64,000 bases of DNA from the IMG/VR virus record IMGVR_UViG_3300033233_000001, positions 62,001 to 126,000 of that record, one strand, 5' to 3'. The translations under genes and the position numbers were made by a program. This document shows, piece after piece, positions 2,867 through 39,244 of this stretch. The first letter of the stretch is position 1, and the number at the start of each line of letters is the position of its first letter. The notes under the pieces were generated by a model that had not been told where the DNA came from, made no database searches, and worked only from the letters and a program-made list of their open reading frames with translations.

Positions 2867-3046
2867 AAATGACCATACATGACCATCGCGATTGCCGGCT
2901 CTGTACGCCCCGCCACGCGGCCAGTTTTCGAGCCCTCTCAGCGTAGCATCGACGTCGCCGGAGTCGAACGCTCGCGACTGGCACGGAGATTGGCGATGGC
3001 CGAAAATGTCAACGGTTTCGGGCTGTCCTACATGCTACTACTGGAA
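2867..3046. repeat. ~180-bp non-coding element, copy 1 (copy 2 at 39065-39244)
   Basis: collinear shared blocks AAATGACCATA..TGACCATCGCGATTGCCGGC, AGTCGAACGCTCGCGACTGGCACG (24/24), GTTTCGG, TACTACT. Confidence 0.85.
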
Positions 3047-3158
3047 AATCCTGTTCGGCCGCACGGCTCGTGCGTTGTGGCTGGACAGGGCGACAGAGGT
3101 GGCGGTCGGCGGTGATAGCTGGCATAGAGAGTGTCCGGCGGATTCTTTTGCGCGACGA

Positions 3159-3213
3159 TTGACGACGCTGCGACAGATGTTAGAATGTGGTCGAAGCTGG
3201 CAGACACGCTGGC
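3159..3213 (+). promoter_or_regulatory. promoter TTGACG-N16-TAGAAT plus leader hairpin GCTGGC-AGACAC-GCTGGC
   Basis: -35 3159-3164, -10 3181-3186, hairpin 3196-3213, GGAGG RBS. Confidence 0.8.
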
Positions 3214-3230
3214 CCGGAGGAGAGACGAAC

Positions 3231-3437
3231 ATGACGACGAAGACGCTCACCGTGCCCGGCCACTTCCCCGCGCCCAAGGCGCGCCGCTTTGCCGGATGCG
3301 ACGTGAAGGTCGAGTTTTGTCTCCCGGCGCCGGGCGTCGGGAAGTTGAAGACGATCGACGTGGTGTTGTCGCGAGACCATGCGAAGGCGCTCGTCGCTTC
3401 GCTCACGGCGTTGCTGTCAGAGATGGGGCAGTCGTGA
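3231..3437 (+). CDS. hypothetical protein (MTTKTLTVPG...)
   Basis: GGAGG RBS; first gene of the plus-strand unit. Confidence 0.65.
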   Translation: MTTKTLTVPGHFPAPKARRFAGCDVKVEFCLPAPGVGKLKTIDVVLSRDHAKALVASLTALLSEMGQS

Positions 3438-3775
3438 ACGCCGTGGACGGCTGGAGGGTTGCGGTGAGAACGCAGGGCGGTGCGGTGACCGCGTGGCAGC
3501 AGTGCTACCGCTCCGCTCCGGAGTTCAACAACCGCGAGTGGTACAGGATCGAGGGCATGTCGCCGGCCGGCGACTGGACTGCGTCGCTGTACGACTCGGG
3601 TCAGCACGGCTACAACTACCCGGCCGCGGCATTGCCGGTCGTTCGCGCTGCCATCCGTCGCGCCGTGGCCAAGCTGGTCAAGGCCGAGGAAACGTGCGGC
3701 GGCGCGTACTATCGCCACCTTCAGGACACCATCCGGCCGTACGTGAGCACGCCGCCCTACGCGAGCGCGCGATGA
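3434..3775 (+). CDS. hypothetical protein
   Basis: GTGA overlap with previous gene. Confidence 0.6.
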   Translation: MNAVDGWRVAVRTQGGAVTAWQQCYRSAPEFNNREWYRIEGMSPAGDWTASLYDSGQHGYNYPAAALPVVRAAIRRAVAKLVKAEETCGGAYYRHLQDTIRPYVSTPPYASAR

Positions 3776-4047
3776 CTGCGACGAAGCGAGCGGACACCAC
3801 GTTGATCGCGGTCACGAAGCGCACTATCAGCTTCGAGGGCAGCATCGAGTACATCGCGGCCGACGTGAAGCACTCGGGCAGGGCCTACGCGATCAAGGCG
3901 ATGCGGATCGACGGGCGCCCCGACCTCGGCGTCTACGAAGCGCGGCGTGTCTTCACGCTCTCGAACGGCAGCGCACAGGAGTCGCCCCATCGTTCGCCAT
4001 CGCGCATCAACCGTGCGATCGAGGACGGGCTGCGAGGCGTGCTGTGA
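3772..4047 (+). CDS. hypothetical protein
   Basis: ATGA overlap with previous gene. Confidence 0.6.
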   Translation: MTATKRADTTLIAVTKRTISFEGSIEYIAADVKHSGRAYAIKAMRIDGRPDLGVYEARRVFTLSNGSAQESPHRSPSRINRAIEDGLRGVL

Positions 4048-4105
4048 GCGTTCTCCGGCTGGACGACGAGCGTCTGACGCTGCTGCGCTTTGTTGCGATA
4101 GACGC

Positions 4106-4163
4106 TTGACAGCGCCTGTGCTTGGGCTAGATTCACGTCACATGAGCCGCCGAACATGGTGGC
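4106..4163 (+). promoter_or_regulatory. promoter TTGACA-N16-TAGATT plus leader hairpin GCCGCC-GAACAT-GGTGGC
   Basis: -35 4106-4111, -10 4128-4133, hairpin 4146-4163. Confidence 0.75.
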
Positions 4164-4175
4164 CGGGAGCAGACG

Positions 4176-4475
4176 GTGATGCGTGTGTACCATGCGAAGT
4201 TGAGCGAGAGCGGTCGGATGTACGACCCGGCTTTCGACGGCGAGCGACCGTTCAATGCCGAGGGCTACGACCTCGTGGCGACCGTCGAAGGGTTCGGCCT
4301 CGACGAGGCGTTCTCGCGGACGAACACGATCGACTTCCCCTGGTGGGAGAACGCGTGCGTCGTCAAGACCGTGGACGGCGGCGTGCGCTCGACGTCGGTG
4401 GGCGACGTGATCGTCGATGCCGATGGCGTCGCGTGGCGCGTCGAGGCGACGGGCTTTCGGCAGGTGGCGTCGTGA
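4176..4475 (+). CDS. YodL-like domain protein
   Basis: LDEAF..TN...RSTSVGDVIV...GF pattern typical of YodL-like domains. Confidence 0.6.
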   Translation: MMRVYHAKLSESGRMYDPAFDGERPFNAEGYDLVATVEGFGLDEAFSRTNTIDFPWWENACVVKTVDGGVRSTSVGDVIVDADGVAWRVEATGFRQVAS

Positions 4476-4622
4476 GCCGCGGGCGCGCCCACGCCGAGGT
4501 GATCGCGAAGCCGCGAGTGCCTCGCGGCTCGTAAAATGCGCGCTTCTCGACGCGGAACCGCGGTAAGGGTCGTGACCCGCGCATAGGGCGACGGGCGCGC
4601 TGGAACGAAGAGGACGGACAAG

Positions 4623-5732
4623 ATGGCGATGAAGATCGACGTGACGAAGACGATTCTCCGGGCTCGCTCGCTCGGAGAGCAGGTGAGCGAGGCGCGCACG
4701 GTGCTGATCGGCCTTCGGGCCCAGCGGGCGGCGCGCGACGCGGAGGTCGCGAAGCTCGACAAGAGCATCAGCGAAGCGGAGGGTCAGCGCGCAACGCTCA
4801 TCGCGCTCATCGCGCGGATCGACGAGGCCATCGAGGCGCTGTCGTCGTCGCTCGGCGATCACGAGCCGTTCGCGGAGATCGGCATCAAGCCGCCGGACAT
4901 CAAGCCGCCGGACATCAAGCGGACGCGCGGTGCACAGCCGTCGCCATCGAGCGTGAGCTTCCGTCAGAAGCTGGTGGAGTCGTTCGTCGACGGTGCCCGG
5001 GACGTGTCCGCTCTTCGCCGGCTGTTTCCGGACGTGTCCGCGAACGCTGTCGCCGCAGGCGTGAGCGAACTCGTGCGCATCGGCAAGCTCGTGCGCACCG
5101 GTACGGTCAAGAAGTACGTGTACGCGCTGCCGGCCGGCGCGTCGAAGGCGGCCGGCGCGTCGGTGGCTGCACCGAGGGCCAAGGCCACGGTGCCCAACAG
5201 CGCGACCGTGCGGGGCGGCGTACTGGCAGCGTGTCTGGACGGCCCCAAGCGGATGAGCGACTTCCGCAAGGCGCTGCCGAACGCGAACGAGAACACGATC
5301 CACTCGGCCGCGAACTACCTCGTGATGAACGGGACGCTCGTGCGTGCCGGCGAGTCGATGCACTACGTGTACGCGATGCCGAGCCACGCGAAGATCGCCG
5401 CCGGCATGATCGCCGAAGCGAAGGCGAACGAGGCTGCGAACGGCGTGCCGGTGCCGGCGCCTACGCCGCCGTCCGGCAAGTCGGCGAAGCGCGCGGTCAA
5501 GCGCGGTCCTGGCCCGTGGAAGGGCGCGAAGCAGGCTCCGCGGGGCTCTCGCGTCGCGGCCGTGCTCGAAGTCTGCAAGGGCGGTCCGATGGCATTCGGC
5601 GAGATCGCGCGACTTCTGCCGGACGTGAACCGGATGGTGCTGTCGACGACGGTCGGAACACTCAAGAAGACCGGTCGTCTTCGGCAGACCGGCGTGCGCG
5701 GCAGCCACATGTACACGACGGCCGCGCGGTGA
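4623..5732 (+). CDS. coiled-coil plus three repeated winged-helix-like DNA-binding modules
   Basis: N-terminal heptads; repeats GKLVRTG..YVYALP / GTLVRAG..YVYAMP / GRLRQTG..HMYT. Confidence 0.7.
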   Translation: MAMKIDVTKTILRARSLGEQVSEARTVLIGLRAQRAARDAEVAKLDKSISEAEGQRATLIALIARIDEAIEALSSSLGDHEPFAEIGIKPPDIKPPDIKRTRGAQPSPSSVSFRQKLVESFVDGARDVSALRRLFPDVSANAVAAGVSELVRIGKLVRTGTVKKYVYALPAGASKAAGASVAAPRAKATVPNSATVRGGVLAACLDGPKRMSDFRKALPNANENTIHSAANYLVMNGTLVRAGESMHYVYAMPSHAKIAAGMIAEAKANEAANGVPVPAPTPPSGKSAKRAVKRGPGPWKGAKQAPRGSRVAAVLEVCKGGPMAFGEIARLLPDVNRMVLSTTVGTLKKTGRLRQTGVRGSHMYTTAAR

Positions 5733-5773
5733 CCGACTCCGCTCCGAGGGAGTGCTCGCCTGGATACTGAGCG

Positions 5774-6001
5774 ATGGACGTCCGACTCGAACTGAAACAG
5801 AGCCTCGTCCTCACCAAGGATGAGTGGCGGCTCATCTCTAAGGCGCTGCGCGGCGCGCTCAAGCCGGGTCCCGAGCAGGAAGAGGCGTTCGAGCTTCAGA
5901 AGAAGATGCACCGACTGAAGCACGAGTGGCTGAAGCAGACCATCGCGGAGTCGCAAAAGGTCATCGACAACATCGACAAGGCAGAGACGGAGGACGTGTG
6001 A
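5774..6001 (+). CDS. hypothetical protein
   Basis: 75 aa helical ORF. Confidence 0.65.
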   Translation: MDVRLELKQSLVLTKDEWRLISKALRGALKPGPEQEEAFELQKKMHRLKHEWLKQTIAESQKVIDNIDKAETEDV

Positions 6002-6408
6002 GCTACTTCGACGACGCACCGCTGAACGAACAGGCCGAGGCGTTCTTGCCGATCGCCAAGCTCATCATCGAGCAGTGCGATTTTCACGCGGGCGCCGTGC
6101 GCTTCGATGTACTGCGCAACGGCCGCGAGCGTGGATACGTACTCACGCGTACCGACGACGAGAAGAACGGCCTGCGCGTCTTCTTCGCCGAGTGCAGAGG
6201 CTCGGACCAGTTCTTTCTCTGGTCGTGGCCGACGACGAATCCGGCGCTGGCTCCGACGATCGCAGAATGCAGTACGCACAGCTACGAGGAGCGCGTCGAG
6301 GTTCCGTGGCTGCGCTTCGATCTCGCGTGGGCTCAGCTGAAGAAGCTCGTCGATCGCCCGAGCCGGCGTGCGCAGATACCGCACCGCGTCGAGGGGTTCG
6401 GCGCGTGA
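5998..6408 (+). CDS. hypothetical protein
   Basis: GGAGG RBS, GTGA overlap. Confidence 0.65.
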   Translation: MSYFDDAPLNEQAEAFLPIAKLIIEQCDFHAGAVRFDVLRNGRERGYVLTRTDDEKNGLRVFFAECRGSDQFFLWSWPTTNPALAPTIAECSTHSYEERVEVPWLRFDLAWAQLKKLVDRPSRRAQIPHRVEGFGA

Positions 6409-6920
6409 GCAAGCACCGGCACCGCTTCAGCGTCAACAGCTACCGGCCGCGAGGCTTGTCGATCTTGGATGTCGAAGAGGGGTGTGCGTGCGGCGAAACG
6501 CGCACACGCAAGCCGACGGCGGACGAGAACGCCGGGCATCGCGCGAACGAGAAGGACGAGGTCGAGCTTCACCGGCTCAGCCGCGCTTTCGAGAAGGCTC
6601 TCGGTGACGAGTACGGCTACGAGGCGATGCTCATCGCCCGGCGCTGGGCGAAGAAGCATCCGGCTCGGATCTTCGTTGCGCGCATCGACGACGGCCACTT
6701 CTGCGGCTCGAACATCGTGTTCCTGACGAACGAGACAGAACAGCAGTACTGGGGTGCGAGTGCCTGGGTCATTCCGCAGTGCACGGGCGAGAAGCCGATG
6801 CGGTTCTTTCTTTATCCGGGCGACAGCGACAGCTTGCTCGAAGCTCTCACGGCGGTGCGCAAGCGTGAGCGCGTGAAGCGCGATGGGCGCAGTCTGCTCA
6901 ACCCGATGACCGCACGCTGA
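6405..6920 (+). CDS. hypothetical protein
   Basis: GTGA overlap; protein-like composition. Confidence 0.6.
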   Translation: MSKHRHRFSVNSYRPRGLSILDVEEGCACGETRTRKPTADENAGHRANEKDEVELHRLSRAFEKALGDEYGYEAMLIARRWAKKHPARIFVARIDDGHFCGSNIVFLTNETEQQYWGASAWVIPQCTGEKPMRFFLYPGDSDSLLEALTAVRKRERVKRDGRSLLNPMTAR

Positions 6921-6921
6921 G

Positions 6922-7155
6922 ATGCCGTACCGAACGCCAGCCTCGCCGAAGCCGCCGCGGGCCGCGGAAGCTCGCTGCTGCGGCCGCTGCTGGCCGATGA
7001 CCGGCGGCTGTCTGCATCGCTGCTACTTCGAGGTGCCGGGACCGCTCGGGCTCGGCAAGCGCAAGCTCAGCGCGGGCTGTTCGTTCGATCTGCCAGGCGG
7101 TACGCCTCCGCTCGTCTATCGAGATGGCGTGTGGACGCGCGAGGAGAAGTCGTGA
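6922..7155 (+). CDS. small Cys-rich hypothetical protein
   Basis: adjacent in operon. Confidence 0.45.
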   Translation: MPYRTPASPKPPRAAEARCCGRCWPMTGGCLHRCYFEVPGPLGLGKRKLSAGCSFDLPGGTPPLVYRDGVWTREEKS

Positions 7156-7418
7156 AGCCCGCCGACCTCAAGCGGCTATCGCCGCAGTCCGAGATGTGCG
7201 AGCCGTGTGGCGAGTGCCGACGCTGCCAGGAACGGCACGTCTGGAAAGACGAGGCACGTCGGCTCCGCGCACAGCAGAAGCGCCTCGCGCAGGCCGCGAT
7301 CGACTTCATCGAGGCCGCGGGCGCGACGGAGACGCCGGGGCTGTTGGAGCGACGCTTGCGAACGCTCGCGGAGAAGGCAGGCGCGCAGTCGTCAGTTGCG
7401 CATCGCGACGGCAAGTAG
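7131..7418 (+). CDS. small CxxC-CxxC hypothetical protein (likely start GTG ~7152)
   Basis: CEPCGECRRC motif; GAGGAG RBS. Confidence 0.5.
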   Translation: MDARGEVVKPADLKRLSPQSEMCEPCGECRRCQERHVWKDEARRLRAQQKRLAQAAIDFIEAAGATETPGLLERRLRTLAEKAGAQSSVAHRDGK

Positions 7419-7763: not shown

Positions 7764-7773
7764 CGTCGGCTCC

Positions 7774-8830: not shown

Positions 8831-9225
8831 GCCGCGCGGTCTACGACCGGTCGACGACGTTCCGCTTCCTCGCGGCCGAGGCGAAGAAGCTCGCGGACTC
8901 GGAAGCGGTGGGCGTCATCGACGAGCAGGGTGCGCTCGTCCATCTGCTCGCTGGCAAGACCGGCCGTTTCGCGTCCGCCGACCTGAAGAAGCTCGTGATC
9001 GCCAAGCTCGCCGCTGACGGCGGCCGCGAGCCCGACGAGAAGCCGCCGGCCGAGAAGAAGAAGCGCACGAGCCGCAAGCCAAGCGTGAAGCGTACGTCGA
9101 GAAAGAAGAAGGACCCGACGGGCGCCGCCGCGGGAAAGCGCACGAGCAAGAAGCGCACGAGCCGAAGAAAGAAGCCGAAGGCGCCGGAAGCGGCTTCGTC
9201 ACGTTCGTCGATCTGGAACGCCTGA
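8656..9225 (+). CDS. hypothetical protein with basic C-terminal tail (4x KRTS[RK])
   Basis: TATAGT box 8 nt upstream of ATG; histone-H1-like tail. Confidence 0.6.
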   Translation: MSDKNPAPFSGSAGHAVPAALAGIPAASASPPSGRWYRVIACHLDAGGTFGIRLREYLSRAVYDRSTTFRFLAAEAKKLADSEAVGVIDEQGALVHLLAGKTGRFASADLKKLVIAKLAADGGREPDEKPPAEKKKRTSRKPSVKRTSRKKKDPTGAAAGKRTSKKRTSRRKKPKAPEAASSRSSIWNA

Positions 9226-9244
9226 AAACCTGAGGAGAACAAGA

Positions 9245-11825: not shown

Positions 11826-12146
11826 ATGGACATCGCGGCGCTCGACCAGGCGATGATGGAGGCGGCCGGCGCCGCCGAAGACCCTAGCGACCCTGAGCGG
11901 TCCGCTCGCGTCGCAGCAGCCGAGGCGCTAGCGATTGAGTACGTGAGGCAGTGGTTTTCGGATCTGAAATGGGCCGGACGACAGCTTGAGTCGGATCCGG
12001 TCGTGACCTGCGTCGATGTTGGCCCCAGCGATGTCATCGTCGCGATCGACGCGAAGCGGCTTCCGGATGGGTTCGAGAGCCGCGCCTCCACGCAGCACTT
12101 CGTCATATGCGTGCGCGGCGACAAGATTCTCTGGCGTCACTCCTAG
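11826..12146 (+). CDS. hypothetical protein
   Basis: GGAGG RBS. Confidence 0.65.
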   Translation: MDIAALDQAMMEAAGAAEDPSDPERSARVAAAEALAIEYVRQWFSDLKWAGRQLESDPVVTCVDVGPSDVIVAIDAKRLPDGFESRASTQHFVICVRGDKILWRHS

Positions 12147-28800: not shown

Positions 28801-29129
28801 CGGTACACGAGGAGCGCTAGGCTGTGGAGCGTGCGGGCTGGGTCGTCTTCGAGACCGACGCCAGGAAGCCGCTTCTTGAGCTTCTTGTTCAGGTCTTCGG
28901 CGGCCGAGACGTTGAAGGCGACGATGCAGATGCGCGAGAGTCGCGCGCCGTGGTACTCGACGAGGTGAGCGACGCGCTCAACCATGCAGGTCGTCTTACC
29001 GCTCCCAGCCACGCTGCCTGCTAGGAGCGGGCCGTCCTTGTGCTGGACGATCGCGCGTTGGGCGGGCGTGAGCAGGTCGACGAGCTTCGGCGGCTCGACC
29101 TTCGGCGCCTTCTTCTTCCTCGCGGCCAA
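25842..29129 (-). CDS. uvrD: UvrD/PcrA/Rep SF1 helicase containing an intein
   Basis: AGSGKT, VDEAQD, VGDAGQALYSFR, ENFRS, TIHK/SKGLEY, YVAVTRA; likely TTG start at 29129. Confidence 0.92.
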   Translation of the reverse strand: MAARKKKAPKVEPPKLVDLLTPAQRAIVQHKDGPLLAGSVAGSGKTTCMVERVAHLVEYHGARLSRICIVAFNVSAAEDLNKKLKKRLPGVGLEDDPARTLHSLALLVYRSEESNRSANYGNVEALWNKAIREAAASLGIQKPDVDLVKAFSSKVRNDYLPVPPLPFSPLSGDFDLSKVHTDLLAAADIIIEKKRDPRHGIEDLIRLFYAADNARRAGRVEGANGFPFATFDDILWEAARIVEHDEDIRQIWQQRYDYIIVDEAQDLCEAQWQLIELLASGHRNLVVVGDAGQALYSFRQARPEHLLSFAERWGCGAVYMEENFRSGSDILDCGNRVLDAMAPNDKLPMHLKPTREIRGFVGRLTSSTSAVEAAAIANLCAEQKRRGREWRDMAILIRLNAQSKDIELEFFRQKVPLRMVSGTSFFGLKEAKAMLAYFRLILGKAEEDDLYQALTNPSRYLGRAFVDSVARVDKSDGDWAERIERCDAYHGRARDAAFQFVEQIKEWRGSMLRGATPAQLLERIIDRTQYVQWHRREQAEGDESSSFTNTMARIRSFAEGFDTVEVMLTIVDEMRAQQRAAAQSRNAVSVITIHKCVSPETLVDTDRGTTPISLAHDTGTVATTAGMRQYQAPVRYAKCKMLRMTTRYGYEISVTSDHGLMSWDGSSYVPVPAATLRVGDFLRLKLGTERRQRGRAPRMPLAPGGLDIRTVRHTIPKHLTEEVAEFLGLMVADGTVFRSGFRTTKADLDVIDRFGDLCCRIFGPRVHATKWYVPGKRTGWYNAEVCSVMIADWLRSVGGLSPHKKAIPETIWQTSRQTQVAFLRGLFEDATVNIKDDGRMDHIAFTTKYRDIGFGVQQLLLRHGIITSRFKVRMKTAGRLHDAWRVDAYGQQAAVFASRIGFVSARKNRQSNAAVSPETNTLIPMSKTLARALPRTATTKFDRANAVSRGYVSRHVARKFGLSEDLAFHHDQIEKIERYVGDAMCIEVPGHGRFLQNGFDGCNSKGLEYPVTFIPGMVAANWPVPWGTEREELRCFYVAVTRARDECWISTYTHGDDISGEPVTPSPYLRFVPQSTGAPTSPALPASEDNQLALI
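26121..27344 (-). mobile_element. intein (408 aa) with LAGLIDADG homing endonuclease in UvrD
   Basis: TIHK|CVSPET... TSDHGL ... FLGLMVADG, FLRGLFED ... FDGCN|SKGLE; lower GC. Confidence 0.92.
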
Positions 29130-29140
29130 CTGGCAGCCGG

Positions 29141-29824
29141 CTACTTCTTCGGCTCGGCTCGCGGAACGGCCTGTACGACCGCCTCGATGTCCGGCTCGCC
29201 AGTTGCGCATGCGTCGAGCACGGCGCGCGCGACGCGCATTCCGTACGGGTCGGGACCCCAGATGATGCGGATCACAGGCTCCTCGGTATCGTCGGCGCGG
29301 GCCACGACCGGAAGCGTGTCGTACATCGGCTTGTCGTGACCGTGGATGGCGACGAGCGCGGCCCAGAGCCAGCGAGGAACCTCGACTGCTCGGATCGGGG
29401 GAAGGGGCGGTGCCGGTTCGCCGAGACGGCTGTGCGCTGCTGGTCGCATGGCATCGCTCATATGGCCGTGAAGGAAGTAGGAGTCGAGCACCGTGAGGGC
29501 GTCCTTCCTGACTTGTGGTAGCGGCGCGGGCGTGGCTGGCGCTTTGGCCGTGAGCCCGACAGCTACCGGGTCGAGCTTGATGTGCGTGCAGAGCGATCGG
29601 AGCACGTCTTCATCGATGCGCAGCGACACGGCGTCCGTATCCGTACGCCTGTCGACGGTCACGCGCTCGACGCGGCCACGCCATCGCAAGATCGCGTCGC
29701 GCGTCGCGCTGCTCTGGATGTCGAGATGTCCGAAGTTGACCGCCGACAGCATCATGCCAGCGTCGGCCATCGCGCGCTGAAGGCGCGTCAGTGCGTTACT
29801 GTGTTCGACTAGAATGATATCCAT
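29141..29824 (-). CDS. hypothetical protein (MDIILVEH...)
   Basis: TGATG overlap with the ParB-like gene. Confidence 0.65.
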   Translation of the reverse strand: MDIILVEHSNALTRLQRAMADAGMMLSAVNFGHLDIQSSATRDAILRWRGRVERVTVDRRTDTDAVSLRIDEDVLRSLCTHIKLDPVAVGLTAKAPATPAPLPQVRKDALTVLDSYFLHGHMSDAMRPAAHSRLGEPAPPLPPIRAVEVPRWLWAALVAIHGHDKPMYDTLPVVARADDTEEPVIRIIWGPDPYGMRVARAVLDACATGEPDIEAVVQAVPRAEPKK

Positions 29825-30744
29825 CAATCCTCGTCCTTGCTCAGGAAGCCGATTTCTTTGAGCGCGCTCCGCAGGCCCTTCACGCGGCGGTCCTGGTTCG
29901 GCTCTCCGCAGATCCACTTGAGCAGCGCCTGCTCGCTCGGTTCGAGCGCGTCCATGAACGCCTCGTGCTCGACGAGCTTGCGGATCGTAGCGGCGCCCAC
30001 GCGGCGGCGGATCGCGTGGCCGTTGCTGCTGCCGCGCTTGCGGCGCGCGCGCGCCTCCTTCGCGTCGCTGGCGGAGATCGTGACGCCGAGGCGCTCGCAC
30101 TCGGCGAGGATCTTGTCCTGCTCCTCCTCCGAGAGGTCCGAGTACTGGATGGCAGTACTGGGGCTCCAGATGCCGCGGCGGACGGCGTCCTGCGCCTTCT
30201 TGCCGAGCGTGAGCACCTGAAGCCACTGCGTGACCGCCTGCTCGGACACGCCGTTGTCGATGGCGATGTCCTTGAGCGACAGACCTCGGTCCTTCGAGCG
30301 CGCGGCGCTTTCGGCCTTGACCATGTAGTCGCTGTTCTTGTGGAGGTTCGCGGCCACGCCGAGGCGGATCTGCTTGACGGCGTCGCCGGCTTGCTGCTTC
30401 GGGATGAACGGGACCCGAATCAGCCGCTCTTCCAGCTGCTTGCCGGAGTACTCCGCGCGCAGGCGCTCGTTCGCCGCGCGTGCCCACTTCGTGCGCTGGC
30501 GTCCGTCGATCACGACCGCGCGCGCCGCGCCGCCCGGCAGGGTCTCCTTGCGGATGAGACCAGGCTTGAGCACGCCGTGCGTCATCACGTTCGCGATGTC
30601 GGCCTCGGTAACCGGGATGTGAATGCGCTCGTCGTAGAGCGGATGCTCTGGCCCGTCCTTCGTGTCGAGCCCGATGATCACGACATCTTCAGCATGAAGA
30701 TAGAATCCGTTGACCCGCGGCCCATCGAACAGCTGTCCACTCAT
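29824..30744 (-). CDS. ParB/Srx N-terminal domain protein with HTH
   Basis: HPLYDER, GVLKP, VIDGRQR, HTH (LSLKDIA..GVSEQAV). Confidence 0.8.
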   Translation of the reverse strand: MSGQLFDGPRVNGFYLHAEDVVIIGLDTKDGPEHPLYDERIHIPVTEADIANVMTHGVLKPGLIRKETLPGGAARAVVIDGRQRTKWARAANERLRAEYSGKQLEERLIRVPFIPKQQAGDAVKQIRLGVAANLHKNSDYMVKAESAARSKDRGLSLKDIAIDNGVSEQAVTQWLQVLTLGKKAQDAVRRGIWSPSTAIQYSDLSEEEQDKILAECERLGVTISASDAKEARARRKRGSSNGHAIRRRVGAATIRKLVEHEAFMDALEPSEQALLKWICGEPNQDRRVKGLRSALKEIGFLSKDED

Positions 30745-30808
30745 CGCGCATGCCTCCCGGCGCGCATGTCCGCGCGCACGTCTGTTGTCTGCCCGTCTCT
30801 GCCCGTCT

Positions 30809-31123
30809 CTACTGGCCGGCGTGCTCGGCTTCGCCCGCCTCGTCGCCCACCTTCCCGAACTTGATCACGACCTGGGAACTGATCGTCAGCGAGATCTCGT
30901 CGCCGCGCAGCAGCTTGATGCCCTTCAGCCGCTGGTCCGTCTGATCGATCCCCTTGTCCTGAAGCAGCTTCCGTGCTTCCGACGCCCCCTTGCAGACGAA
31001 GACCTCGTACGTCTGCGTGCCGGCGACCGGCAGGAGCAGCCAGAGCGGCCGCGCCTCGCGGGTCTTCCTCTTCTTCTTGCCGTCCCCGTTCGTCGTCCCC
31101 GTCGTCTCGTTCTCGGTGCCCAT
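30809..31123 (-). CDS. hypothetical protein
   Basis: GGAGG RBS before MGTENE. Confidence 0.65.
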   Translation of the reverse strand: MGTENETTGTTNGDGKKKRKTREARPLWLLLPVAGTQTYEVFVCKGASEARKLLQDKGIDQTDQRLKGIKLLRGDEISLTISSQVVIKFGKVGDEAGEAEHAGQ

Positions 31124-33897: not shown

Positions 33898-34123
33898 CGC
33901 GATCGCCTTCGCCTCTGCGTTCGCCTCTTCGGCCGTGAACTGGCACGTCCAGCGAAGTCGCAGAGACCGCGCAGCGAGTCGCGCTCGGCCTCGGTGTAGA
34001 CCAAGGAGCGCGTGAGTTCACGGACTTCCGCGCGCAGCGCATTGCGTTGGCGCTGGCTCTTGGCGAGGGCGTTCTCCAAGATCCGGACGCGCTCCAGCGG
34101 ACCGACGTTCAGCGGGGTCCGTT

Positions 34124-34753: not shown

Positions 34754-35154
34754 CGCCGTGCTCCTCGTGCGTTGAACTCTTGCTCTTGCTTCTGCTCTTC
34801 GATCTCGACGAGAGCCTCGCCAAGGCGCTCGACGACTGTCTGGGCCTCGTGCTCGGCCTCGCGGGCCAGGAAGTCCTGGATGCCGTCGTAGGCGTTTCCA
34901 GTAGACAGGACCGGCCCCGGCTCGATGGCGCCGAAGATGCCGACGCTGTGGTCGTTGTAGTGGATCACGCCCTGCACGACCCAGTGCCCAGCGGGCTCGT
35001 CGCGGTAGAGCACGTGCAGCCGGCCCTGGATGGCCGGGCAGTCGTTGCCGGCTGCGTCGGACCACGTGATCTCGTCGAAGCGCTTGTGCGGCATGGCGGC
35101 CATCACCATGGCGAACGTCGGCTCGGCTCCGGAGGTGTACGCGCGCGCGGTCAT
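34750..35154 (-). CDS. hypothetical protein
   Basis: ATGA overlap; AGGAG RBS. Confidence 0.55.
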   Translation of the reverse strand: MTARAYTSGAEPTFAMVMAAMPHKRFDEITWSDAAGNDCPAIQGRLHVLYRDEPAGHWVVQGVIHYNDHSVGIFGAIEPGPVLSTGNAYDGIQDFLAREAEHEAQTVVERLGEALVEIEEQKQEQEFNARGARR

Positions 35155-35480
35155 CGTCGCTCCTGCATGTCTTCGTCGCGCCGCTCGGCCTCTGCGTGGC
35201 TGATGTCGGCTGCGACCTGGCCGAGATCGTCGTGGTATTTGTTGAGCCACGCGGCGCACTCGCCGTACAGGAGCGCTTGTGGCGCGTAGATTGGCATCCC
35301 CCAGGCCGACCAGACGCACGGGAAGACTTCGGCGAGGGCCGGATCGATCGTGCGCTCCGCGAAGCCCTCGTAGTCGTACTCGGTGTGCACGGTCAGGATG
35401 ATGAGCGCGCGCGTTCCGTCGCTCGCGCGGAACTCGTAGCCGCCGTCGCGCTGGCCGATCTCGGTCGTGTGGATGCTCAC
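35151..35480 (-). CDS. hypothetical protein
   Basis: overlapping start/stop chain. Confidence 0.6.
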   Translation of the reverse strand: MSIHTTEIGQRDGGYEFRASDGTRALIILTVHTEYDYEGFAERTIDPALAEVFPCVWSAWGMPIYAPQALLYGECAAWLNKYHDDLGQVAADISHAEAERRDEDMQERR

Positions 35481-35716
35481 GACCGTGCCCGCCAGCTGGC
35501 GATCGCGTTGTTGATGGCGTCGGCCGGGCTGTCGCCGCCGCCGCCGGCCTGGTGGAGACGATCGGTGTGGTCAGTCGGACCGACGACCGCGACCCACGGA
35601 AAGGTACCGCCACGAACGCGGGCGAGTCGTACGAGGCGCAGCCCCAGAGCGTCCAGTACGCCGACCATGTCACCGAACGTGGTGTCCATATCGAGCTTGC
35701 CGCTGTAGTCGGTCAC
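35477..35716 (-). CDS. hypothetical protein
   Basis: overlapping start/stop chain. Confidence 0.55.
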   Translation of the reverse strand: MTDYSGKLDMDTTFGDMVGVLDALGLRLVRLARVRGGTFPWVAVVGPTDHTDRLHQAGGGGDSPADAINNAIASWRARS

Positions 35717-35894
35717 TGCCGCTCTCCGAACGCTTCGACCGCGCCGCCGTGCCGGTCGGCGGCTACCTGTGCGCGGGCTCGCGTCTTGTAGACGCGCGCG
35801 CAGTACCCGCCGGGACCGACCATCGACGCCGGCTTGTACTCGCCGATGGTGGTCAGGATCATCACCGGGTTCTGGTGCGATCGGACGATGTAGC

Positions 35895-36563
35895 TCACGA
35901 CCGCTCTCCGAGCGCGCGCAGCGCGGTCAGGTCGCGCTGGAACGCGTAGAGCAGGCGTCCGCGGCGCTCCTCGCACCAGGCGGTGACGACGCGCTGAACG
36001 TGCGCACGGCCGTCCTCGGCCGTGCAGTCGTCGAAGATCTCGTCCCAGGGATCCAGCGGCATCGTGTCCGGGTGCTCGCTGCTCTCGGCCGCGCCGAGCA
36101 CGACCGTGCGTGCGAAGCATTCGCGCGGGTCCGGGTCGTGCGTCTGTGCTGGCCACTCGGACCACTCGGAAACGCCGACCATCTTCTCGGCCCAGTACAC
36201 GGCGGTGTAGTGCATTGGCCCCTCCGGGCCAGCGAGGTGCCAGCGCATGAACGGCGCGAGCTTCGGGAACGCCGCGACGATCTGCTCGACGCACTGATCG
36301 CATGAGGACAGCCAGTACCTCCGGCCGCCAACCGTGATGAACGGTTCGCCGGGGGAGCGACCCGGCGCATAGACCTCGCCGCAGATCGTGAGGTACGGCA
36401 GCACGTTGCCGCCGCGCGCGTACGCGACCTCGGCGACGACGTACGCGTCCTGCCCCGGCAGCTTCGTCGGTCCGAGCTTGAACGAGAATTCGCCGATCGC
36501 CGCGTTGTCCGCCGCGATCTTGTTCGCGAGCTTCGTGCTGATCGTCTGCGCCAGGTCCGTCAT
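35895..36563 (-). CDS. phage hypothetical protein (MTDLAQT...; RWHL..PEGPMHY)
   Basis: GAGGAG RBS, leader hairpin and promoter upstream. Confidence 0.7.
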   Translation of the reverse strand: MTDLAQTISTKLANKIAADNAAIGEFSFKLGPTKLPGQDAYVVAEVAYARGGNVLPYLTICGEVYAPGRSPGEPFITVGGRRYWLSSCDQCVEQIVAAFPKLAPFMRWHLAGPEGPMHYTAVYWAEKMVGVSEWSEWPAQTHDPDPRECFARTVVLGAAESSEHPDTMPLDPWDEIFDDCTAEDGRAHVQRVVTAWCEERRGRLLYAFQRDLTALRALGERS

Positions 36564-36576
36564 GTCTCTCTCCTCT

Positions 36577-36638
36577 GGCCCGGCCATGTGCGGCGGGCTC
36601 TTGTCCGACCATGATAGCGACATCGCAACGCCTGTCAA
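36577..36638 (-). promoter_or_regulatory. promoter TTGACA-N16-TATCAT plus leader hairpin with GCACAT loop
   Basis: -35 36633-36638, -10 36611-36616. Confidence 0.75.
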
Positions 36639-37198
36639 GTACGCGGTCGAAGAAGGTCGCCGAGGCCCTTTGCCCAGCGGCGAATCTCAGGCCGCTTCAT
36701 GGCGGCGCAGATCAACGCGGCGACCGTGTCCACGTTGCCGAGATCGCGCAGGTTGGCGCCGCCGATCGCGAACTCGGCGATATCGGACGGTTCGATCGTC
36801 ATGCCGATGCGTTTGGCCGCGACGATCTCGACCGCGATGGTGTCGATCTCGTGCTGGTTCGCTGCGTTCGTTGTGGCCTGCCATTCGGCCGGCTCATCTG
36901 CATCGGCCTTGGTGTGCTCCGGGAACACCGGAACTGCTTGGCCGACCACCGTCGTCAGTGGTCGGCGCAGCGCGGCGCGCACGCCGCGCCTGAGCACGAC
37001 GACGTGGGCGATCTCGTGGAGCACGGGTTCGATGTAGCCGCGTGGATCGTCCGAGCCGTACACGCCGTATTCCAGCGACTCGCCTTCGGGCCTGACTTCG
37101 GGCCTGACGACGGCACGGAACAGGGACTCGACTCGACGATCTAGTGCCGTACGTGGCCGCGGCGTGATCCAATCGATGTCCGGATCTTCGTAGGCCAC
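36635..37198 (-). CDS. HExxH-motif protein (possible metallopeptidase)
   Basis: VLHEIAH...HE; probable native GTG start at 37198. Confidence 0.55.
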   Translation of the reverse strand: MAYEDPDIDWITPRPRTALDRRVESLFRAVVRPEVRPEGESLEYGVYGSDDPRGYIEPVLHEIAHVVVLRRGVRAALRRPLTTVVGQAVPVFPEHTKADADEPAEWQATTNAANQHEIDTIAVEIVAAKRIGMTIEPSDIAEFAIGGANLRDLGNVDTVAALICAAMKRPEIRRWAKGLGDLLRPRT

Positions 37199-37199
37199 G

Positions 37200-37462
37200 T
37201 CAGTCGTCGCCTTCGAGTAGCCTGTCCGTGCTCGTGCAGTCGACTGAGAGGATGTCGGCGACCGACTCTCCGGTCTCCGCGCCCCATTGCTCGCGTCGCG
37301 CGAGGCGAGCAGCTGGCCACTCATGTTGTAGTCGCGTCCGCAGTCGCAGGTGTTCGTGAAGCCGCGCAGTGCGACATGCTGGCCGCAGTGACAACGACCG
37401 AGCGCTGGCTCGACATAGCCGTTCGCGAGGCGCTTGCGGGGCCGGATGATCTCGATGGTCAT
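37200..37462 (-). pseudogene. small Zn-ribbon protein gene frameshifted by a 5-bp duplication
   Basis: CHCG..NTCDCGRDYNMSGQLLASR continues as EQWGAETGE in another frame; TCGCG TCGCG at 37291-37300. Confidence 0.65.
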
Positions 37463-37996
37463 GGGGTGGGAAGGTACCCGCTCTCTTCGAGATCGTTGAT
37501 GATCTGCACCTGAAGGAGAGCGTTCTCTTCGCGCGACTTCGAGTTCATGAGCTTCGCGACCTTGCGAGCGAAGGCGCGGAGCGCCTCGACCTCGCCCTTC
37601 AGGCTCGCGTTCTCGGCGGCGAGAAGGACGTTCTCTTCCTTGTGCCTGACGGCGGCGAATTGGGCCATGACTACAAATCGTCCCTTCTGTGGTTCCTGCT
37701 CCTGTTCCTGCGCGCGTCGATCGCCGCCCGGAGCGCCTGTCGTGCCTCGTTCACCGTCGCGACCTGTCTCGTCCCGCGCATCTCGATGAGCAGCGCCTCG
37801 GCGGCGGTCTCCACTGCTTCGAGCAGCGTCTTCGGGTGCCGCTCGAAAGCGCGCTCTCGCCGCTCCATGCGGAGCTTCGGGTTGTGCCTCCGGCACCAGT
37901 GACGGCCGTCGCTGGTGATGGTCGTCGCGACCTGTCCGCAAGGGCGGTTGTGGAACCCGGTGCCGACGGACCCGCAGCAACGCTCGTCCGCGTCGC

Positions 37997-38923
37997 TCAC
38001 GACGCCATCTCCGCGGCGAGCGCCATCCAGGCCGCCCGGAGCGCGATCGACACGCGATCGACGGTCGGCGGCTCCGTGGCGGTCACGACGATCGTGGTGT
38101 GCTTGCGTACGCCGTCGAAGTCGGTGCGGCGAACCACGTAGCCGGTCGGGCTCAGCTGGCACGAGATGCTCGGGTTGTACTGCGTCTTCTGGCGCAGCGT
38201 GATGCCGAGTGGCGCGTGCTCGACACGGCACGACCGGTCGGCGAGGAACGGTGCGCGCACGGCGTCGACGATCTTCCGGCACTCGGCGAGCGCAGCCTCG
38301 CGTGCCGGGCGCTCCGCCTCGGACTGGGCGCGCCGGGCGGCCTCGGCCTCGTCCTTGACGCGCTGGCGTGCTGGAGCCGTGAGTACCCAGTCGATGTGCT
38401 CCGCCGAGCCGCCTGCGTCGCGTACGAGGTCGACGACCTGGGAGATGCTCACGCCGCCGTTGCGCACGAGGTCGAACGCGTAGAACGTCAGCGTCGTGCC
38501 CTTCCGACGCGCGAGCCGGCAGCCCTCGACGATGCACTCTTCGAGCGTCGCGCCGCGGTCAGTGATCGCGAACTTGCCGGCGCCGAGGTTCGACAGAAGG
38601 TGACTGCCCATGCACCAGCCGTAGATGTTCGTCGAGAGCGTGTACGGCCGCTCGCCGACGGAGCCGCCGCGGACCTGGTAATCGCAGAGCACGCGATCGG
38701 CGCTGCGGAAGTCGCCGATGGCGCGGTACTTCGCGCGCTCGATCTCGCACCGCGCGTAGTAGGCGCGGACTTCGCTGTCGTCGCCGAGGCGGATCACGAC
38801 GGGTCGCTCGCCGTTGCCGTGGTCAGCAAAACCGACGCCGCAGAGGCCGGCGGTGACCATGCTGCGGATCGCAGCGACGATGTTCTCCCAAGATCCGGTG
38901 ACGGGCGCGACGGTCTCGAACAT
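37997..38923 (-). CDS. hypothetical protein (MFETVAP...)
   Basis: GAGGAGG RBS, hairpin and promoter upstream. Confidence 0.7.
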   Translation of the reverse strand: MFETVAPVTGSWENIVAAIRSMVTAGLCGVGFADHGNGERPVVIRLGDDSEVRAYYARCEIERAKYRAIGDFRSADRVLCDYQVRGGSVGERPYTLSTNIYGWCMGSHLLSNLGAGKFAITDRGATLEECIVEGCRLARRKGTTLTFYAFDLVRNGGVSISQVVDLVRDAGGSAEHIDWVLTAPARQRVKDEAEAARRAQSEAERPAREAALAECRKIVDAVRAPFLADRSCRVEHAPLGITLRQKTQYNPSISCQLSPTGYVVRRTDFDGVRKHTTIVVTATEPPTVDRVSIALRAAWMALAAEMAS

Positions 38924-38940
38924 GGCGGGCTCCTCCTCGG

Positions 38941-38996
38941 GCCGGCGTGTTTGCCGACTCCACAACAGACTTTAGCGATGCCGCGCGCGCTGTCAA
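38941..38996 (-). promoter_or_regulatory. promoter TTGACA-N16-TAAAGT plus leader hairpin GTCGGC-AAACAC-GCCGGC
   Basis: -35 38991-38996, -10 38969-38974. Confidence 0.8.
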
Positions 38997-39064
38997 GGGA
39001 CGGCCACCACAAATCGCAGCGTCGTCGGACAGGCGCGGCCGCAGAGAGGCATGAGCGCGCCTAG

Positions 39065-39244
39065 AAATGACCATATGTGACCATCGCGATTGCCGGCGCT
39101 GTGCGCCACGCTGGCAGGCGCGGTTTTCGGGTGACGTGCTCGTAGGTCCGAAGCGGCTTCAGTCGAACGCTCGCGACTGGCACGACTTCTGGCGACTGGA
39201 GAAAACGCAATAGTTTCGGCATGTCGCACCTCGTACTACTAGAA
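39065..39244. repeat. ~180-bp non-coding element, copy 2
   Basis: collinear with 2867-3046. Confidence 0.85.

What the first reader, a model, noticed from the sequence alone, without database searches (positions are those of the whole stretch)
2867..39244. ~180-bp non-coding element duplicated 36 kb apart, each time between divergent transcription units
Seen: 2867-3046 and 39065-39244 are in direct orientation with near-identical spacing. They share a TGACCAT direct repeat at 10-bp period, CATCGCGATTGCCGGC, an exact 24-mer AGTCGAACGCTCGCGACTGGCACG containing an AGTCG/CGACT inverted repeat, GAAAA..CAA..GTTTCGG and TACTACT, with diverged linkers. No reading frame is conserved between the copies. 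Inference: block-wise conservation suggests a multi-protein DNA site (origin, partition, recombination or packaging site) or a structured ncRNA.
Basis: partly seen in the sequence, partly recalled or inferred. Interest (0 to 1): 0.65.

Follow-up and report, generated by a model that had tools for sequence, protein, structure and literature searches.

The report
Repeated non-coding control module, jumbo phage
A roughly 200-bp non-coding DNA module occurs three times (not two) in an uncultivated high-GC jumbo phage, always between back-to-back early gene blocks, and it most likely works as a protein-bound control region rather than as an RNA or a gene; its exact role is not settled.

Summary
The window lies in a 297,749-bp phage record. 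The element has three copies in that genome. Copy A is at 2843-3047 and copy B at 39043-39245. A third, inverted copy lies outside the window at genome 253797-254010.

A related phage also has three copies at the same positions, and a third phage has at least one. More distant relatives lack the element.

In all seven copies the first motif (a TGACCA direct repeat) and the last (TACTACT) start exactly 166 bp apart, although the linkers between motifs are close to random. I found:
- no conserved reading frame and no three-base periodicity in the substitutions;
- no Rfam match;
- no covariation and no excess folding stability.

Copies within one genome are homogenised. Only its last eight bases, CTGGCACG, are widely conserved (TGGCACG in all seven copies).

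The right half of the element parallels the promoter directly in front of the SNF2 helicase gene. My best reading is a fixed-geometry, protein-bound transcription-control module (confidence about 0.4). Multiple replication origins, a ParB/KorB-type site and a recombination site remain possible. A structured RNA is unlikely.

The parts
2843..3047 (+). Element copy A, from the AGAGAGAGGTA block to TACTACTGGAA
   Evidence: nhmmer match to the element profile, E = 1e-60. Alignments. Lies in a stretch with no GC3 periodicity.
39043..39245 (+). Element copy B, same orientation, 36.2 kb to the right of copy A
   Evidence: nhmmer E = 6e-57. BLAST E = 5e-21 against copy A.
2870..2885 (+). Copy A: TGACCA direct repeat at a 10-bp period. 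Read on the other strand it is TGGTCA twice, an inverted relative of the right-hand bipartite motif.
   Evidence: Largely conserved in all seven copies (T.ACCA....TG.C.A invariant). The only full matches in the genome are in copies A and B.
39068..39083 (+). Copy B: TGACCA direct repeat
2962..2985 (+). Its first 16 nt are a lineage-specific linker; its last 8 nt are the conserved CTGGCACG.
   Evidence: Identical in A and B. Replaced by a different sequence in copy C and in all three copies of the related phage.
39161..39184 (+). Copy B: the same exact 24-mer
2979..2996 (+). Copy A: bipartite motif TGGCACG-N5-TGGCGA
   Evidence: TGGCACG-N5-TG.C is invariant in seven copies. TGGCAC-N6-TGGC occurs only four times in 298 kb, three of them in the element copies.
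39178..39195 (+). Copy B: bipartite motif
3002..3026 (+). Copy A: A-tract, a CAA-N3-TTTC block (a -10-like AAYGRT hexamer 14 bp after the bipartite motif), then an invariant TGT
   Evidence: Position-by-position parallel with the SNF2 proximal promoter.
3036..3042 (+). Copy A: invariant TACTACT, starting 166 bp after the start of the TGACCA repeat
   Evidence: Same 166-bp distance in all seven copies.
39234..39240 (+). Copy B: invariant TACTACT. In B it runs into a TAGAAT -10-like hexamer.
39148..39162 (+). Copy B: near-perfect palindrome CCGAAGC-G-GCTTCAG, one member of a genome-wide GAAGCNGCTTC family
   Evidence: 23 copies in the genome against 1.7 expected. Perfect in copy C and in the related phage's copy C. 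One compensated change in the third phage. Degenerate in both A copies.
2772..2799 (-). Leftward sigma-70-type promoter next to copy A (TTGACA, 16-nt spacer, TAGAAT), followed by a conserved 5'-UTR hairpin at 2743-2760 and a strong ribosome-binding site
   Evidence: Promoter scan, 11 of 12 matches. The cassette profile is found at least nine times in the genome.
3159..3186 (+). Rightward promoter cassette of the same type, about 115 bp right of copy A
38969..38996 (-). Leftward promoter next to copy B (TTGACA, 16-nt spacer, TAAAGT)
39284..39342 (+). Second bipartite motif, inside an 18-bp perfect palindrome (39284-39301). Fourteen bp later comes TACGCT (39328-39333), and 6 nt after that the ATG of the SNF2 gene (39340). 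This looks like a leaderless proximal promoter.
   Evidence: 23-nt direct repeat of the element's motif, 83% identical, 118 bp downstream. The same arrangement occurs in the third phage.
2513..2722 (-). Left flanking gene of copy A: 69-aa acidic, Cys-rich protein with no family match
3231..3437 (+). Right flanking gene of copy A: 68 aa, no family match
37997..38923 (-). Left flanking gene of copy B: 308 aa, no family match
39340..42036 (+). Right flanking gene of copy B: SNF2-family helicase with an N-terminal DUF6011 zinc ribbon
   Evidence: Pfam SNF2-rel_dom 2e-26, DUF6011 2e-12, Helicase_C 1e-7.

Best explanation
The element is a cis-acting DNA module of about 200 bp on which several proteins assemble in a fixed geometry. 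It sits in three control regions of the phage where blocks of small, mostly unknown genes diverge. Those genes appear to be early genes, an inference from their consensus host-type promoters.

I think it most likely works as a factor-dependent transcription-control region. Its right half has the layout of a rightward promoter. A bipartite direct repeat, TGGCACG-N5-TGGCGA, lies where a -35 element or a class II activator site would be. A weak -10-like hexamer (AAYGRT) follows 14 bp later, and an invariant TGT sits where transcription would start.

About 100 bp upstream lies an inverted, related pair of half-sites (TGGTCA twice on the other strand). In most copies a GAAGCNGCTTC-type palindrome lies between them. 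These could bind the same or further regulators, and could loop or bend the DNA.

What is shown: the copies exist and are non-coding, their spacing is fixed, and the motif is shared with the SNF2 promoter. What is inferred: that the module acts in transcription, that it reads rightward, and that a trans-acting factor exists. That factor is unidentified and could be encoded by the phage or the host.

Copies in one genome are kept alike by gene conversion confined to the element.
For: 1. It is real, repeated and positionally conserved. There are three copies in this genome. A related phage (82% identical SNF2 protein) has three copies at the same positions. A third phage has at least one.

2. 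The geometry is fixed. The TGACCA repeat and TACTACT start exactly 166 bp apart in 7 of 7 copies. Copy B carries a +1 and a -1 indel that cancel. The linkers are only about 57% identical, against about 45-50% for unrelated flanks aligned the same way. By contrast the distance to the neighbouring leftward promoter varies (54, 67, 77 or 86 bp), so the element is a separate unit.

3. It is not coding and not a structured RNA.

4. TGGCAC-N6-TGGC occurs only four times in 298 kb. Three are in the element copies. The fourth overlaps the -35 region of the leaderless-type promoter of the SNF2 gene. The next elements fall at the same spacing in both settings: 14 bp to TACGCT, then 6-7 nt to the ATG, versus 14 bp to AAYGRT, then 7 nt to TGT in the element. 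The same holds in the third phage.

5. All copies lie at points where gene orientation switches from minus to plus, next to consensus sigma-70-type promoters with a conserved 5'-UTR hairpin.

6. In the related phage the element copies are 82-88% identical to one another while their flanks are 42-67% identical. Shared patches form a mosaic: its copy C matches its copy B on the left and its copy A in the middle.
Against: There is no expression data. Only the source DNA run holds this phage.

The proposed -10 hexamer is weak and its spacing to the bipartite motif is short, so the promoter would need a factor. I found no convincing candidate. The genome has no sigma-54 activator, no receiver domain, and only a sub-threshold Trans_reg_C match.

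Copy A has a separate consensus rightward promoter 115 bp further on, so a promoter inside the element is not needed there.

The parallel with the SNF2 promoter rests on two phages. In the related phage that proximal motif is degenerate.

Fixed spacing and short boxes fit origins, centromeres and recombination complexes equally well.
Confidence: 0.4

Rival explanations
1. The three copies are replication origins or initiation zones. Initiator half-sites (TGGTCA twice, then TGGCAC and TGGCGA) would flank the least GC-rich stretch, which would serve as the unwinding region. This would resemble the multiple origins of T4 or the oriL/oriR pair of SPP1.
For: Repeated short boxes sit at fixed spacing. 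All copies lie where gene orientation switches from minus to plus. The right half (A-tract to TACTACT) is the most AT-rich part of the region. A 298-kb phage could plausibly use several origins; that last point rests on my own knowledge.
Against: Cumulative GC skew has a single maximum near 139.7 kb and its minimum at the record ends. It shows no local extremum at 65, 101 or 254 kb. There is no truly AT-rich segment. No recognisable initiator, primase or polymerase gene is adjacent. Close relatives lack the element at the same positions.
Confidence: 0.17
2. It is a centromere-like or genome-organising site for a ParB/KorB-type protein, comparable to the dispersed centromere sites of phage N15 or the KorB operators of plasmid RK2. 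Regulation of nearby promoters would be a side effect.
For: The palindrome inside the element belongs to a family, GAAGCNGCTTC, with 23 copies against 1.7 expected. It is the most over-represented 5-N-5 palindrome in the genome and occurs only with a 1-nt spacer. It shares its central AGC-S-GCT with the KorB operator TTTAGC(C/G)GCTAAA (PMC2680271). A protein at 29824-30864 (minus strand) matches the PHROG 'ParB-like partition protein' family at 1e-16, with a weak HTH_ParB match.
Against: The palindrome is degenerate in both A copies and imperfect in two others, so it cannot be what defines the element. There is no Pfam ParB_N match in the whole genome. The ParB-like protein has no sequence match among solved structures. 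I did not look for a ParA. Nineteen of the 23 palindromes lie inside genes, away from the element.
Confidence: 0.1
3. It is a structured non-coding RNA or RNA leader, for example an anti-termination or regulatory RNA transcribed from one of the flanking promoters.
For: Fixed length with variable linkers can also mark an RNA fold. One short hairpin or palindrome shows a compensated change in the third phage.
Against: No Rfam family matches, even at E = 10. The consensus structure energy is only -7.1 and -12.4 kcal/mol for about 200 nt of 65% GC sequence, with positive covariation terms and only 2-3 pairs changed on both sides. Of 14 folds, 12 have z between -1.9 and +0.7 and one reaches -2.7; the means are about -0.3 and -0.5. 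No promoter is placed to transcribe the whole element. No terminator-like site is present.
Confidence: 0.07
4. It is a site-specific recombination site for one of the phage's two Xer-like tyrosine recombinases. The requirement for identical crossover regions would explain why the 24-mer is identical between copies in one genome.
For: Two tyrosine recombinase genes exist, at genome 125.6-126.9 kb and 26.9-28.0 kb. Copies A and B carry AGTCG, an 8-nt spacer, then CGACT. The overall layout (repeats, core, A-tract, further box) loosely recalls an attP-type complex; that comparison rests on my own knowledge.
Against: The inverted repeat is absent from copy C and from all copies in the relatives. 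The recombinase genes are tens of kilobases from every copy. The related phage keeps the same order and orientation of A and B. An independent assembly of the source reads crosses copy A in one 29.5-kb contig with no alternative joint. Mosaic patches indicate ordinary gene conversion.
Confidence: 0.06
5. It has no function of its own. It would be a decaying remnant of a duplicated intergenic stretch or of a lost gene, such as the endonuclease VII genes that occupy the same positions in relatives.
For: More distant relatives do without it, and some carry a homing-type endonuclease gene there instead.
Against: Fifty-seven columns are invariant across seven copies while the linkers are near background identity. 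There is no net indel over 166 bp. Endonuclease VII proteins match only a short piece to the right of one relative's copy, not the element itself.
Confidence: 0.05

Closest known systems
PeSL cassettes (promoter-early stem-loop) of T4-type phages (PMC2839356, PMC4122927)
   Same: Both are repeated intergenic regulatory cassettes at the borders of small early genes of unknown function, and both go with swapping of gene cassettes between related phages. Here a promoter plus 5'-UTR hairpin cassette occurs at least nine times, and the genes around it are shuffled between relatives.
   Different: The comparison fits the flanking promoter cassettes, not the element. The element is about 200 bp, has three copies, carries no consensus promoter or terminator, and keeps its genomic positions.
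Activator-dependent promoters in which direct repeats replace the -35 element (pho-box type, PhoB/OmpR family); comparison from my own knowledge
   Same: Two 7-bp direct repeats lie just upstream of a weak -10. The same motif overlaps the -35 region of a real gene's promoter.
   Different: The repeat period is 12 bp rather than 11. No response regulator was found in the phage. Binding has not been tested.
Sigma-54 (-24/-12) promoters
   Same: TGGCACG matches the -24 element perfectly. Repeats about 100 bp upstream lie where enhancer sites would be.
   Different: At the -12 position the sequence reads TGG-C, so the GC dinucleotide is one base too far away. There are no canonical TGGCAC-N5-TTGC sites in the genome. 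The phage has no sigma-54 activator. The many leaderless-type genes hint at a host group that may lack sigma-54 (inference).
KorB operators of plasmid RK2 and the dispersed centromere sites of phage N15
   Same: A 13-bp palindrome with the same AGC-S-GCT centre as the KorB operator is scattered over the genome and present in promoter regions. A ParB-like protein is encoded.
   Different: The palindrome is only one box, and an optional one, within the element. Most copies of the palindrome lie inside genes. There is no ParB_N domain by Pfam.
Multi-box nucleoprotein sites organised at fixed spacing (lambda attP and cosB, P1 parS and pac); comparison from my own knowledge
   Same: They are 100-250 bp long, with short boxes in defined order and spacing and bendable A/T tracts.
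   Different: Those sites are single-copy and lie next to their int, terminase or par genes. This element has three copies and none of these genes lies beside any of them.

Membership tests
Structured non-coding RNA (any Rfam family or a new one) | Match to a curated covariance model | tested here: not met
   No match at gathering score across the window. Only chance-level matches at E up to 10 in both intergenic regions.
Structured non-coding RNA (any Rfam family or a new one) | Conserved base pairs supported by compensatory changes | tested here: not met
   RNAalifold on six copies (the seventh was found afterwards), both strands: -7.1 and -12.4 kcal/mol, covariation terms +1.5 and +1.6, and 2-3 pairs with changes on both sides.
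Structured non-coding RNA (any Rfam family or a new one) | Folding energy lower than shuffled controls | tested here: not met
   z-scores lie between -2.7 and +0.7, with means near -0.3 and -0.5.
Small protein-coding gene | A frame with start and stop conserved across copies, and substitutions concentrated at third codon positions | tested here: not met
   The ATG-led frame has no start in one relative and stops after 9 codons in two others. Variable sites per phase are 41/58, 35/58 and 40/57. There is no GC3 periodicity.
Sigma-54 promoter | TGGCAC at -24 and TTGC at -12, with GG-N10-GC spacing | tested here: not met
   The -24 part is perfect, but the -12 part reads YTGGC, so GC is one base too far. 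The genome has no TGGCAC-N5-TTGC sites.
Sigma-54 promoter | A cognate AAA+ enhancer-binding protein | tested here: not met
   No Sigma54_activat match in the phage. The host is unknown and was not testable.
Replication origin | Strand-composition switch at the site | tested here: not met
   The cumulative GC skew turns only near 139.7 kb and at the record ends.
Replication origin | Iterons next to an AT-rich unwinding element and an initiator gene | tested here: inconclusive
   Repeated half-sites are present and the right half is relatively AT-rich, but not strongly so. The neighbouring genes are unknown.
ParB/parS or KorB-operator type site | A palindromic site present in every copy | tested here: not met
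   Perfect or near-perfect in 3 of 7 copies. Imperfect in one more. Symmetry-preserving (compensated) changes in another. Degenerate in both A copies.
ParB/parS or KorB-operator type site | A ParB-family protein encoded by the same genome | tested here: inconclusive
   PHROG 1033 at 1e-16 and HTH_ParB at 8e-4 (below its cut-off) for the protein at 29824-30864. Pfam ParB_N has no match in the genome.
Tyrosine-recombinase site (att, dif or lox type) | Inverted core arms around a 6-8-bp spacer in all copies | tested here: not met
   Present only in copies A and B of this genome.
Tyrosine-recombinase site (att, dif or lox type) | Recombination products between copies | tested here: not met
   No alternative joint appears in the independent contigs over copy A. 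Order and orientation are the same in the related phage. This test is weak, because contigs drop rare variants.
Miniature transposable element | Terminal inverted repeats and variable insertion positions | tested here: not met
   No inverted repeat bounds the element. The positions are shared by two phage species.
PeSL-like mobile regulatory cassette | An early promoter joined to a stem-loop, in many copies, at gene-cassette borders | tested here: inconclusive
   Met by the flanking promoter/hairpin cassette, with at least nine copies. Not met by the element itself.

The most novel reading that the evidence does not exclude
The three copies are dispersed, fixed-geometry nucleoprotein hubs that couple genome organisation or replication initiation to early transcription in a jumbo phage. 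They would work together with a ParB/KorB-like protein that recognises the 23 GAAGCNGCTTC palindromes spread over the genome. That would amount to a phage-encoded, plasmid-like global control and segregation system, with element copies kept matched by gene conversion.
Probability: 0.12. Interest if true: 0.7.

Novelty: new variant of a known kind. Interest (0 to 1): 0.4.

Why it matters
Almost nothing is known about how uncultivated, high-GC jumbo phages control their early genes or start replication. This element is a well-delimited handle on that question. It is a 200-bp module with invariant boxes and an exact 166-bp spacing. It has three copies per genome, and within-genome homogenisation marks it as one functional class.

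If it is a factor-dependent promoter or operator, it defines a regulon that includes the SNF2 helicase, and the boxes can serve as bait to find the regulator. If it turns out to be an origin or a centromere-like hub, it would show that a phage of this size uses several dispersed sites.

On the practical side, the element and the promoter cassettes around it are useful markers for annotating this phage clade. Gene callers place false ORFs over them; one such call lies over the related phage's copy C.

Tried and rejected
**Searches for more copies**
- Exact searches for the 24-mer and the 20-mer in IMG/VR found nothing.
- blastn against GenBank phages found nothing.
- Degenerate patterns returned only this genome, the one related viral record and two chance matches. 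One chance match was inside a 1090-aa ORF. The other was in a 48% GC contig of a Latescibacterota MAG with no other similarity.

**Coding readings**
- The ATG-led small ORF (MTI.DHRDC...) is not conserved.
- A minus-strand frame is open in all seven copies. I rejected it for four reasons: it begins right after two TAG codons with no start codon; copies A and B read the identical 24-mer in different frames; it has no GC3 signal; and its substitutions show no periodicity.
- I did not invoke TAG recoding. The genome ends 93 of 459 predicted genes with TAG and shows no clear read-through pattern.

**Gene remnant.** The endonuclease VII proteins of relatives match only a 20-aa piece to the right of one relative's copy.

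**Regulator candidates**
- IHF-site reading of the CAA-N4-TT block: the fit to the consensus is poor, so I dropped it.
- No response regulator, sigma-54 activator or serine recombinase was found in the phage.

**Expression.** No RNA run holds this phage, so expression could not be tested.

**Rearrangement.** Laying the source run's independent contigs over copy A showed one clean 29.5-kb contig and no joints.

**Access limits.** The Logan contigs of the third phage could not be searched whole. Whether that phage has an A copy is unknown. Whether its element-free C position belongs to the same genome is assumed from the shared sample.

Full report
**Where the window lies.** The window is bases 62001-126000 of a 297,749-bp linear virus record, about 65% GC and about 90% complete by CheckV. 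It is an uncultivated jumbo phage from a sediment metagenome. It has no close relative among sequenced phage isolates. The best tblastn identities for its SNF2 helicase are around 30%.

**Checking the observation.** The two stretches align at 72% identity over 180 nt (E = 5e-21 within the genome). Both copies lie in long stretches without third-position GC periodicity, 2723-3230 and 38924-39339, between genes that diverge.

A profile built from the first five copies then found a third copy in this genome, at 253797-254010 on the minus strand (E = 1e-26). It also lies in a 505-bp divergent gap. All three copies sit where gene orientation switches from minus to plus.

**Relatives.**
- A viral record whose SNF2 protein is 82% identical carries the element upstream of that gene, and a second copy 43.4 kb away in the same relative order and orientation.
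- A further contig from the same sample carries the third copy, upstream of the orthologues of the genes that flank copy C.
- A third phage (77% identical SNF2) has the element at position B. A contig from the same sample that covers position C has no element there, but an endonuclease VII gene.
- Phages with 57-72% identical marker proteins lack the element at both positions.
- No further copies turned up in IMG/VR, JGI metagenome contigs, GTDB genomes or GenBank phages.

The element is therefore confined to a small clade.

**Anatomy (alignment A9).** From left to right:
1. an AGAGAGAGGTA block;
2. about 25 bp later, a TGACCA direct repeat at a 10-bp period;
3. a GTTTTC block;
4. GTAG;
5. a palindrome of the CCGAAGC-N-GCTTCGG type;
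6. a variable 17-mer;
7. the bipartite TGGCACG-N5-TGGCGA;
8. an A-tract;
9. CAA-N3-TTTC;
10. TGT;
11. TACTACT.

The TGACCA repeat and TACTACT start 166 bp apart in all seven copies (109 + 57 bp). Copy B reads 110 + 56, so a +1 and a -1 indel cancel. The distance to the -35 of the neighbouring leftward promoter varies (54, 67, 77 or 86 bp), so the element is a unit of its own.

Linkers are about 57% identical. Unrelated flanks aligned the same way give 45-50%. Even so, 57 columns are invariant across all seven copies. That combination is not neutral decay.

**Not a gene.** The region has no GC3 periodicity. No frame has a conserved start and stop. Variable columns are spread evenly over the three phases: 41/58, 35/58 and 40/57. 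One minus-strand frame is open in all copies, but I rejected it for these reasons:
- it begins right after two TAG codons and has no start codon;
- copies A and B read their identical 24-mer in different frames;
- it has no GC3 signal and no periodicity.

The phage does carry a tRNA with a CUA anticodon. The genome does not show TAG recoding, however: 93 of 459 predicted genes end in TAG. I therefore kept the standard code.

**Not a structured RNA, as far as seven copies can tell.** Rfam finds nothing. RNAalifold gives -7.1 and -12.4 kcal/mol with covariation penalties. Folding z-scores scatter around zero. No RNA run holds this phage, so expression could not be checked.

**Concerted evolution.** In the related phage the three copies are 84-88% identical to each other but only 64-71% identical to the copies of this genome. 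Positional orthologues are no closer than non-orthologues. The homogenisation stops at the element's borders, where flanks are 42-67% identical. It is also mosaic: that phage's copy C matches its copy B on the left and its copy A in the middle. This points to gene conversion among copies.

In this genome, A and B share two exact patches (20 and 24 nt) set in linkers at 57% identity, while copy C differs. Copy C and all three copies of the related phage carry a different, mutually similar sequence there. Only the final TGGCACG is conserved in all seven copies.

**What it most likely does.** TGGCAC-N6-TGGC occurs four times in 298 kb. Three are the element copies. The fourth lies 118 bp right of copy B, as a 23-nt direct repeat (83% identical) inside an 18-bp perfect palindrome.

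At that fourth site TACGCT follows 14 bp later, and the ATG of the SNF2 gene comes 6 nt after that, with no ribosome-binding site. This is the layout of a leaderless-type promoter. At least 21 other genes of this phage show the same layout. The third phage has the same arrangement.

Inside the element the same positions hold the bipartite motif, then 14 bp, then AAYGRT, then 7 nt, then the invariant TGT. The right half of the element therefore looks like a paralogue of a real promoter in which the bipartite repeat occupies the -35 region.

The TGACCA repeat, read on the other strand (TGGTCA twice), is an inverted relative of that motif about 100 bp upstream. I take the element to be a fixed-geometry control region with a factor-dependent rightward promoter and upstream sites for the same or additional proteins. 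The factor is not identified.

The element resembles a sigma-54 promoter only in its -24 half. The -12 GC is one base out of register, and the phage has no enhancer-binding protein.

**Rivals.**
- *Origins* fit the repeated boxes and the divergent setting. The GC skew, however, turns only near 139.7 kb and at the record ends, and no replication-initiator gene is recognisable next to any copy.
- *A ParB/KorB-type site* is suggested by the palindrome (details under "Surroundings" below). But the palindrome is degenerate in the A copies, and no ParB_N domain is found.
- *A recombination site* has two Xer-like recombinases in the genome to call on. But it lacks a conserved core, adjacency to a recombinase gene and any rearrangement.

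**Surroundings.**
- The leftward promoter next to every copy (TTGACA, 16-nt spacer, TAGAAT-like) comes with a conserved 5'-UTR hairpin and a strong ribosome-binding site. Compensated changes in copy C support the hairpin. This cassette occurs at least nine times in the genome, clustered around copies A and C, and also in all relatives.
- Genes around these cassettes are shuffled between relatives. This recalls the PeSL cassettes of T4-type phages (PMC2839356, PMC4122927).
- GAAGCNGCTTC is the most over-represented 5-N-5 palindrome in the genome: 23 copies against 1.7 expected, and only with a 1-nt spacer. It shares its centre with the KorB operator (PMC2680271). A PHROG ParB-like protein is encoded at 29824-30864.

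**Verdict.** This is a real, selected, previously undescribed non-coding module. It belongs to the known broad kind of protein-bound phage control sites. It is moderately interesting and its mechanism is unresolved.

Noticed in passing
G000:C1:253797-254010 (minus strand; outside the window; L023:2298-2511): Third, inverted copy of the element. It lies in a 505-bp divergent gap, with the same leftward promoter cassette beside it.
   Followed up: yes
window 684-753(-), 1403-1478(-), 2728-2806(-), 3152-3226(+), 4101-4172(+), 38926-39002(-); also genome 254056-254133(+), 259780-259847(+), 295797-295872(-): A repeated cassette: a consensus sigma-70-type promoter, a conserved 5'-UTR hairpin (GCYGGC, 6 nt, GCYGGC, with compensated changes) and a GGAGGAG ribosome-binding site. 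It is also present in all relatives. Flanking genes are shuffled between phages, as with PeSL cassettes.
   Followed up: partly
23 sites genome-wide, for example window 2369-2379, 9187-9197, 12053-12063, 28865-28875, 30961-30971, 39150-39160, 52316-52326: The palindrome GAAGCNGCTTC occurs 23 times against 1.7 expected from 5-mer counts (z = 16). The excess is seen only with a 1-nt spacer, and 18 of 23 have C or G at the centre. Nineteen lie inside genes, in several frames. It is also enriched in relatives. It shares its centre with the KorB operator.
   Followed up: partly
window 29824-30864 (-): A 346-aa protein matching PHROG 'ParB-like partition protein' (1e-16), with a sub-threshold HTH_ParB match. 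No Pfam ParB_N match exists anywhere in the genome, and the protein has no sequence match among solved structures.
   Followed up: partly
window 39284-39342: An 18-bp perfect palindrome overlaps a second TGGCACG-N5-TGGCGA motif. Then comes TACGCT, and the SNF2 ATG follows 6 nt later with no ribosome-binding site. This looks like a leaderless promoter with an operator. At least 21 genes in the genome have this leaderless layout.
   Followed up: partly
window 58861-58935 (+): A tRNA with anticodon CUA (an amber suppressor; ARAGORN labels it Pyl), just upstream of a gene. Stop-codon use among my 459 predicted genes is TGA 324, TAG 93, TAA 42. I saw no clear sign of TAG recoding.
   Followed up: partly
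window 55581-56942 (+): Strong match (2e-83) to the PHROG family of PurZ-type adenylosuccinate synthetase homologues. The phage may replace adenine with 2-aminoadenine in its DNA.
   Followed up: no
window 51906-54569 (+): An 887-aa RtcB-type RNA ligase that matches in two separated stretches. The protein is about twice the usual length, so it may hold an intein or another insertion.
   Followed up: no
L014:5264-5917, L020:4609-4965, L029:3139-3702, L031:3135-3656; remnant at L028:3461-3529 (-): In relatives that lack the element, endonuclease VII (homing-type) genes occupy the same divergent gaps. A roughly 20-aa remnant of one lies just right of the related phage's copy C.
   Followed up: partly
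genome 125604-126908 (+; from window 63604, running past the window's end) and genome 26949-28013 (-): Two Xer-like tyrosine recombinases (SAM-like N-terminal domain plus catalytic domain) in a phage with no detectable serine recombinase. They could indicate integration or multimer resolution.
   Followed up: partly
five sites genome-wide; related sequences at window 39272-39284 and L008:2929-2939: A second over-represented palindrome, CTGTCNGACAG (5 copies against 0.33 expected). The exact form lies between the related phage's copy B and its SNF2 gene; the window carries only an imperfect version there.
   Followed up: no
whole genome: Cumulative GC skew rises to a single maximum near 139.7 kb and falls to the record ends. 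This is partly independent of gene orientation: 253-291 kb holds plus-strand genes but has negative skew.
   Followed up: no
window 4623-5732 (+): A 369-aa protein with several winged-helix-like matches (HxlR-like, 'transcriptional activator'), 1.6 kb right of copy A. A 32% identical homologue sits at the same place in the related phage. It is a candidate trans-acting factor.
   Followed up: partly
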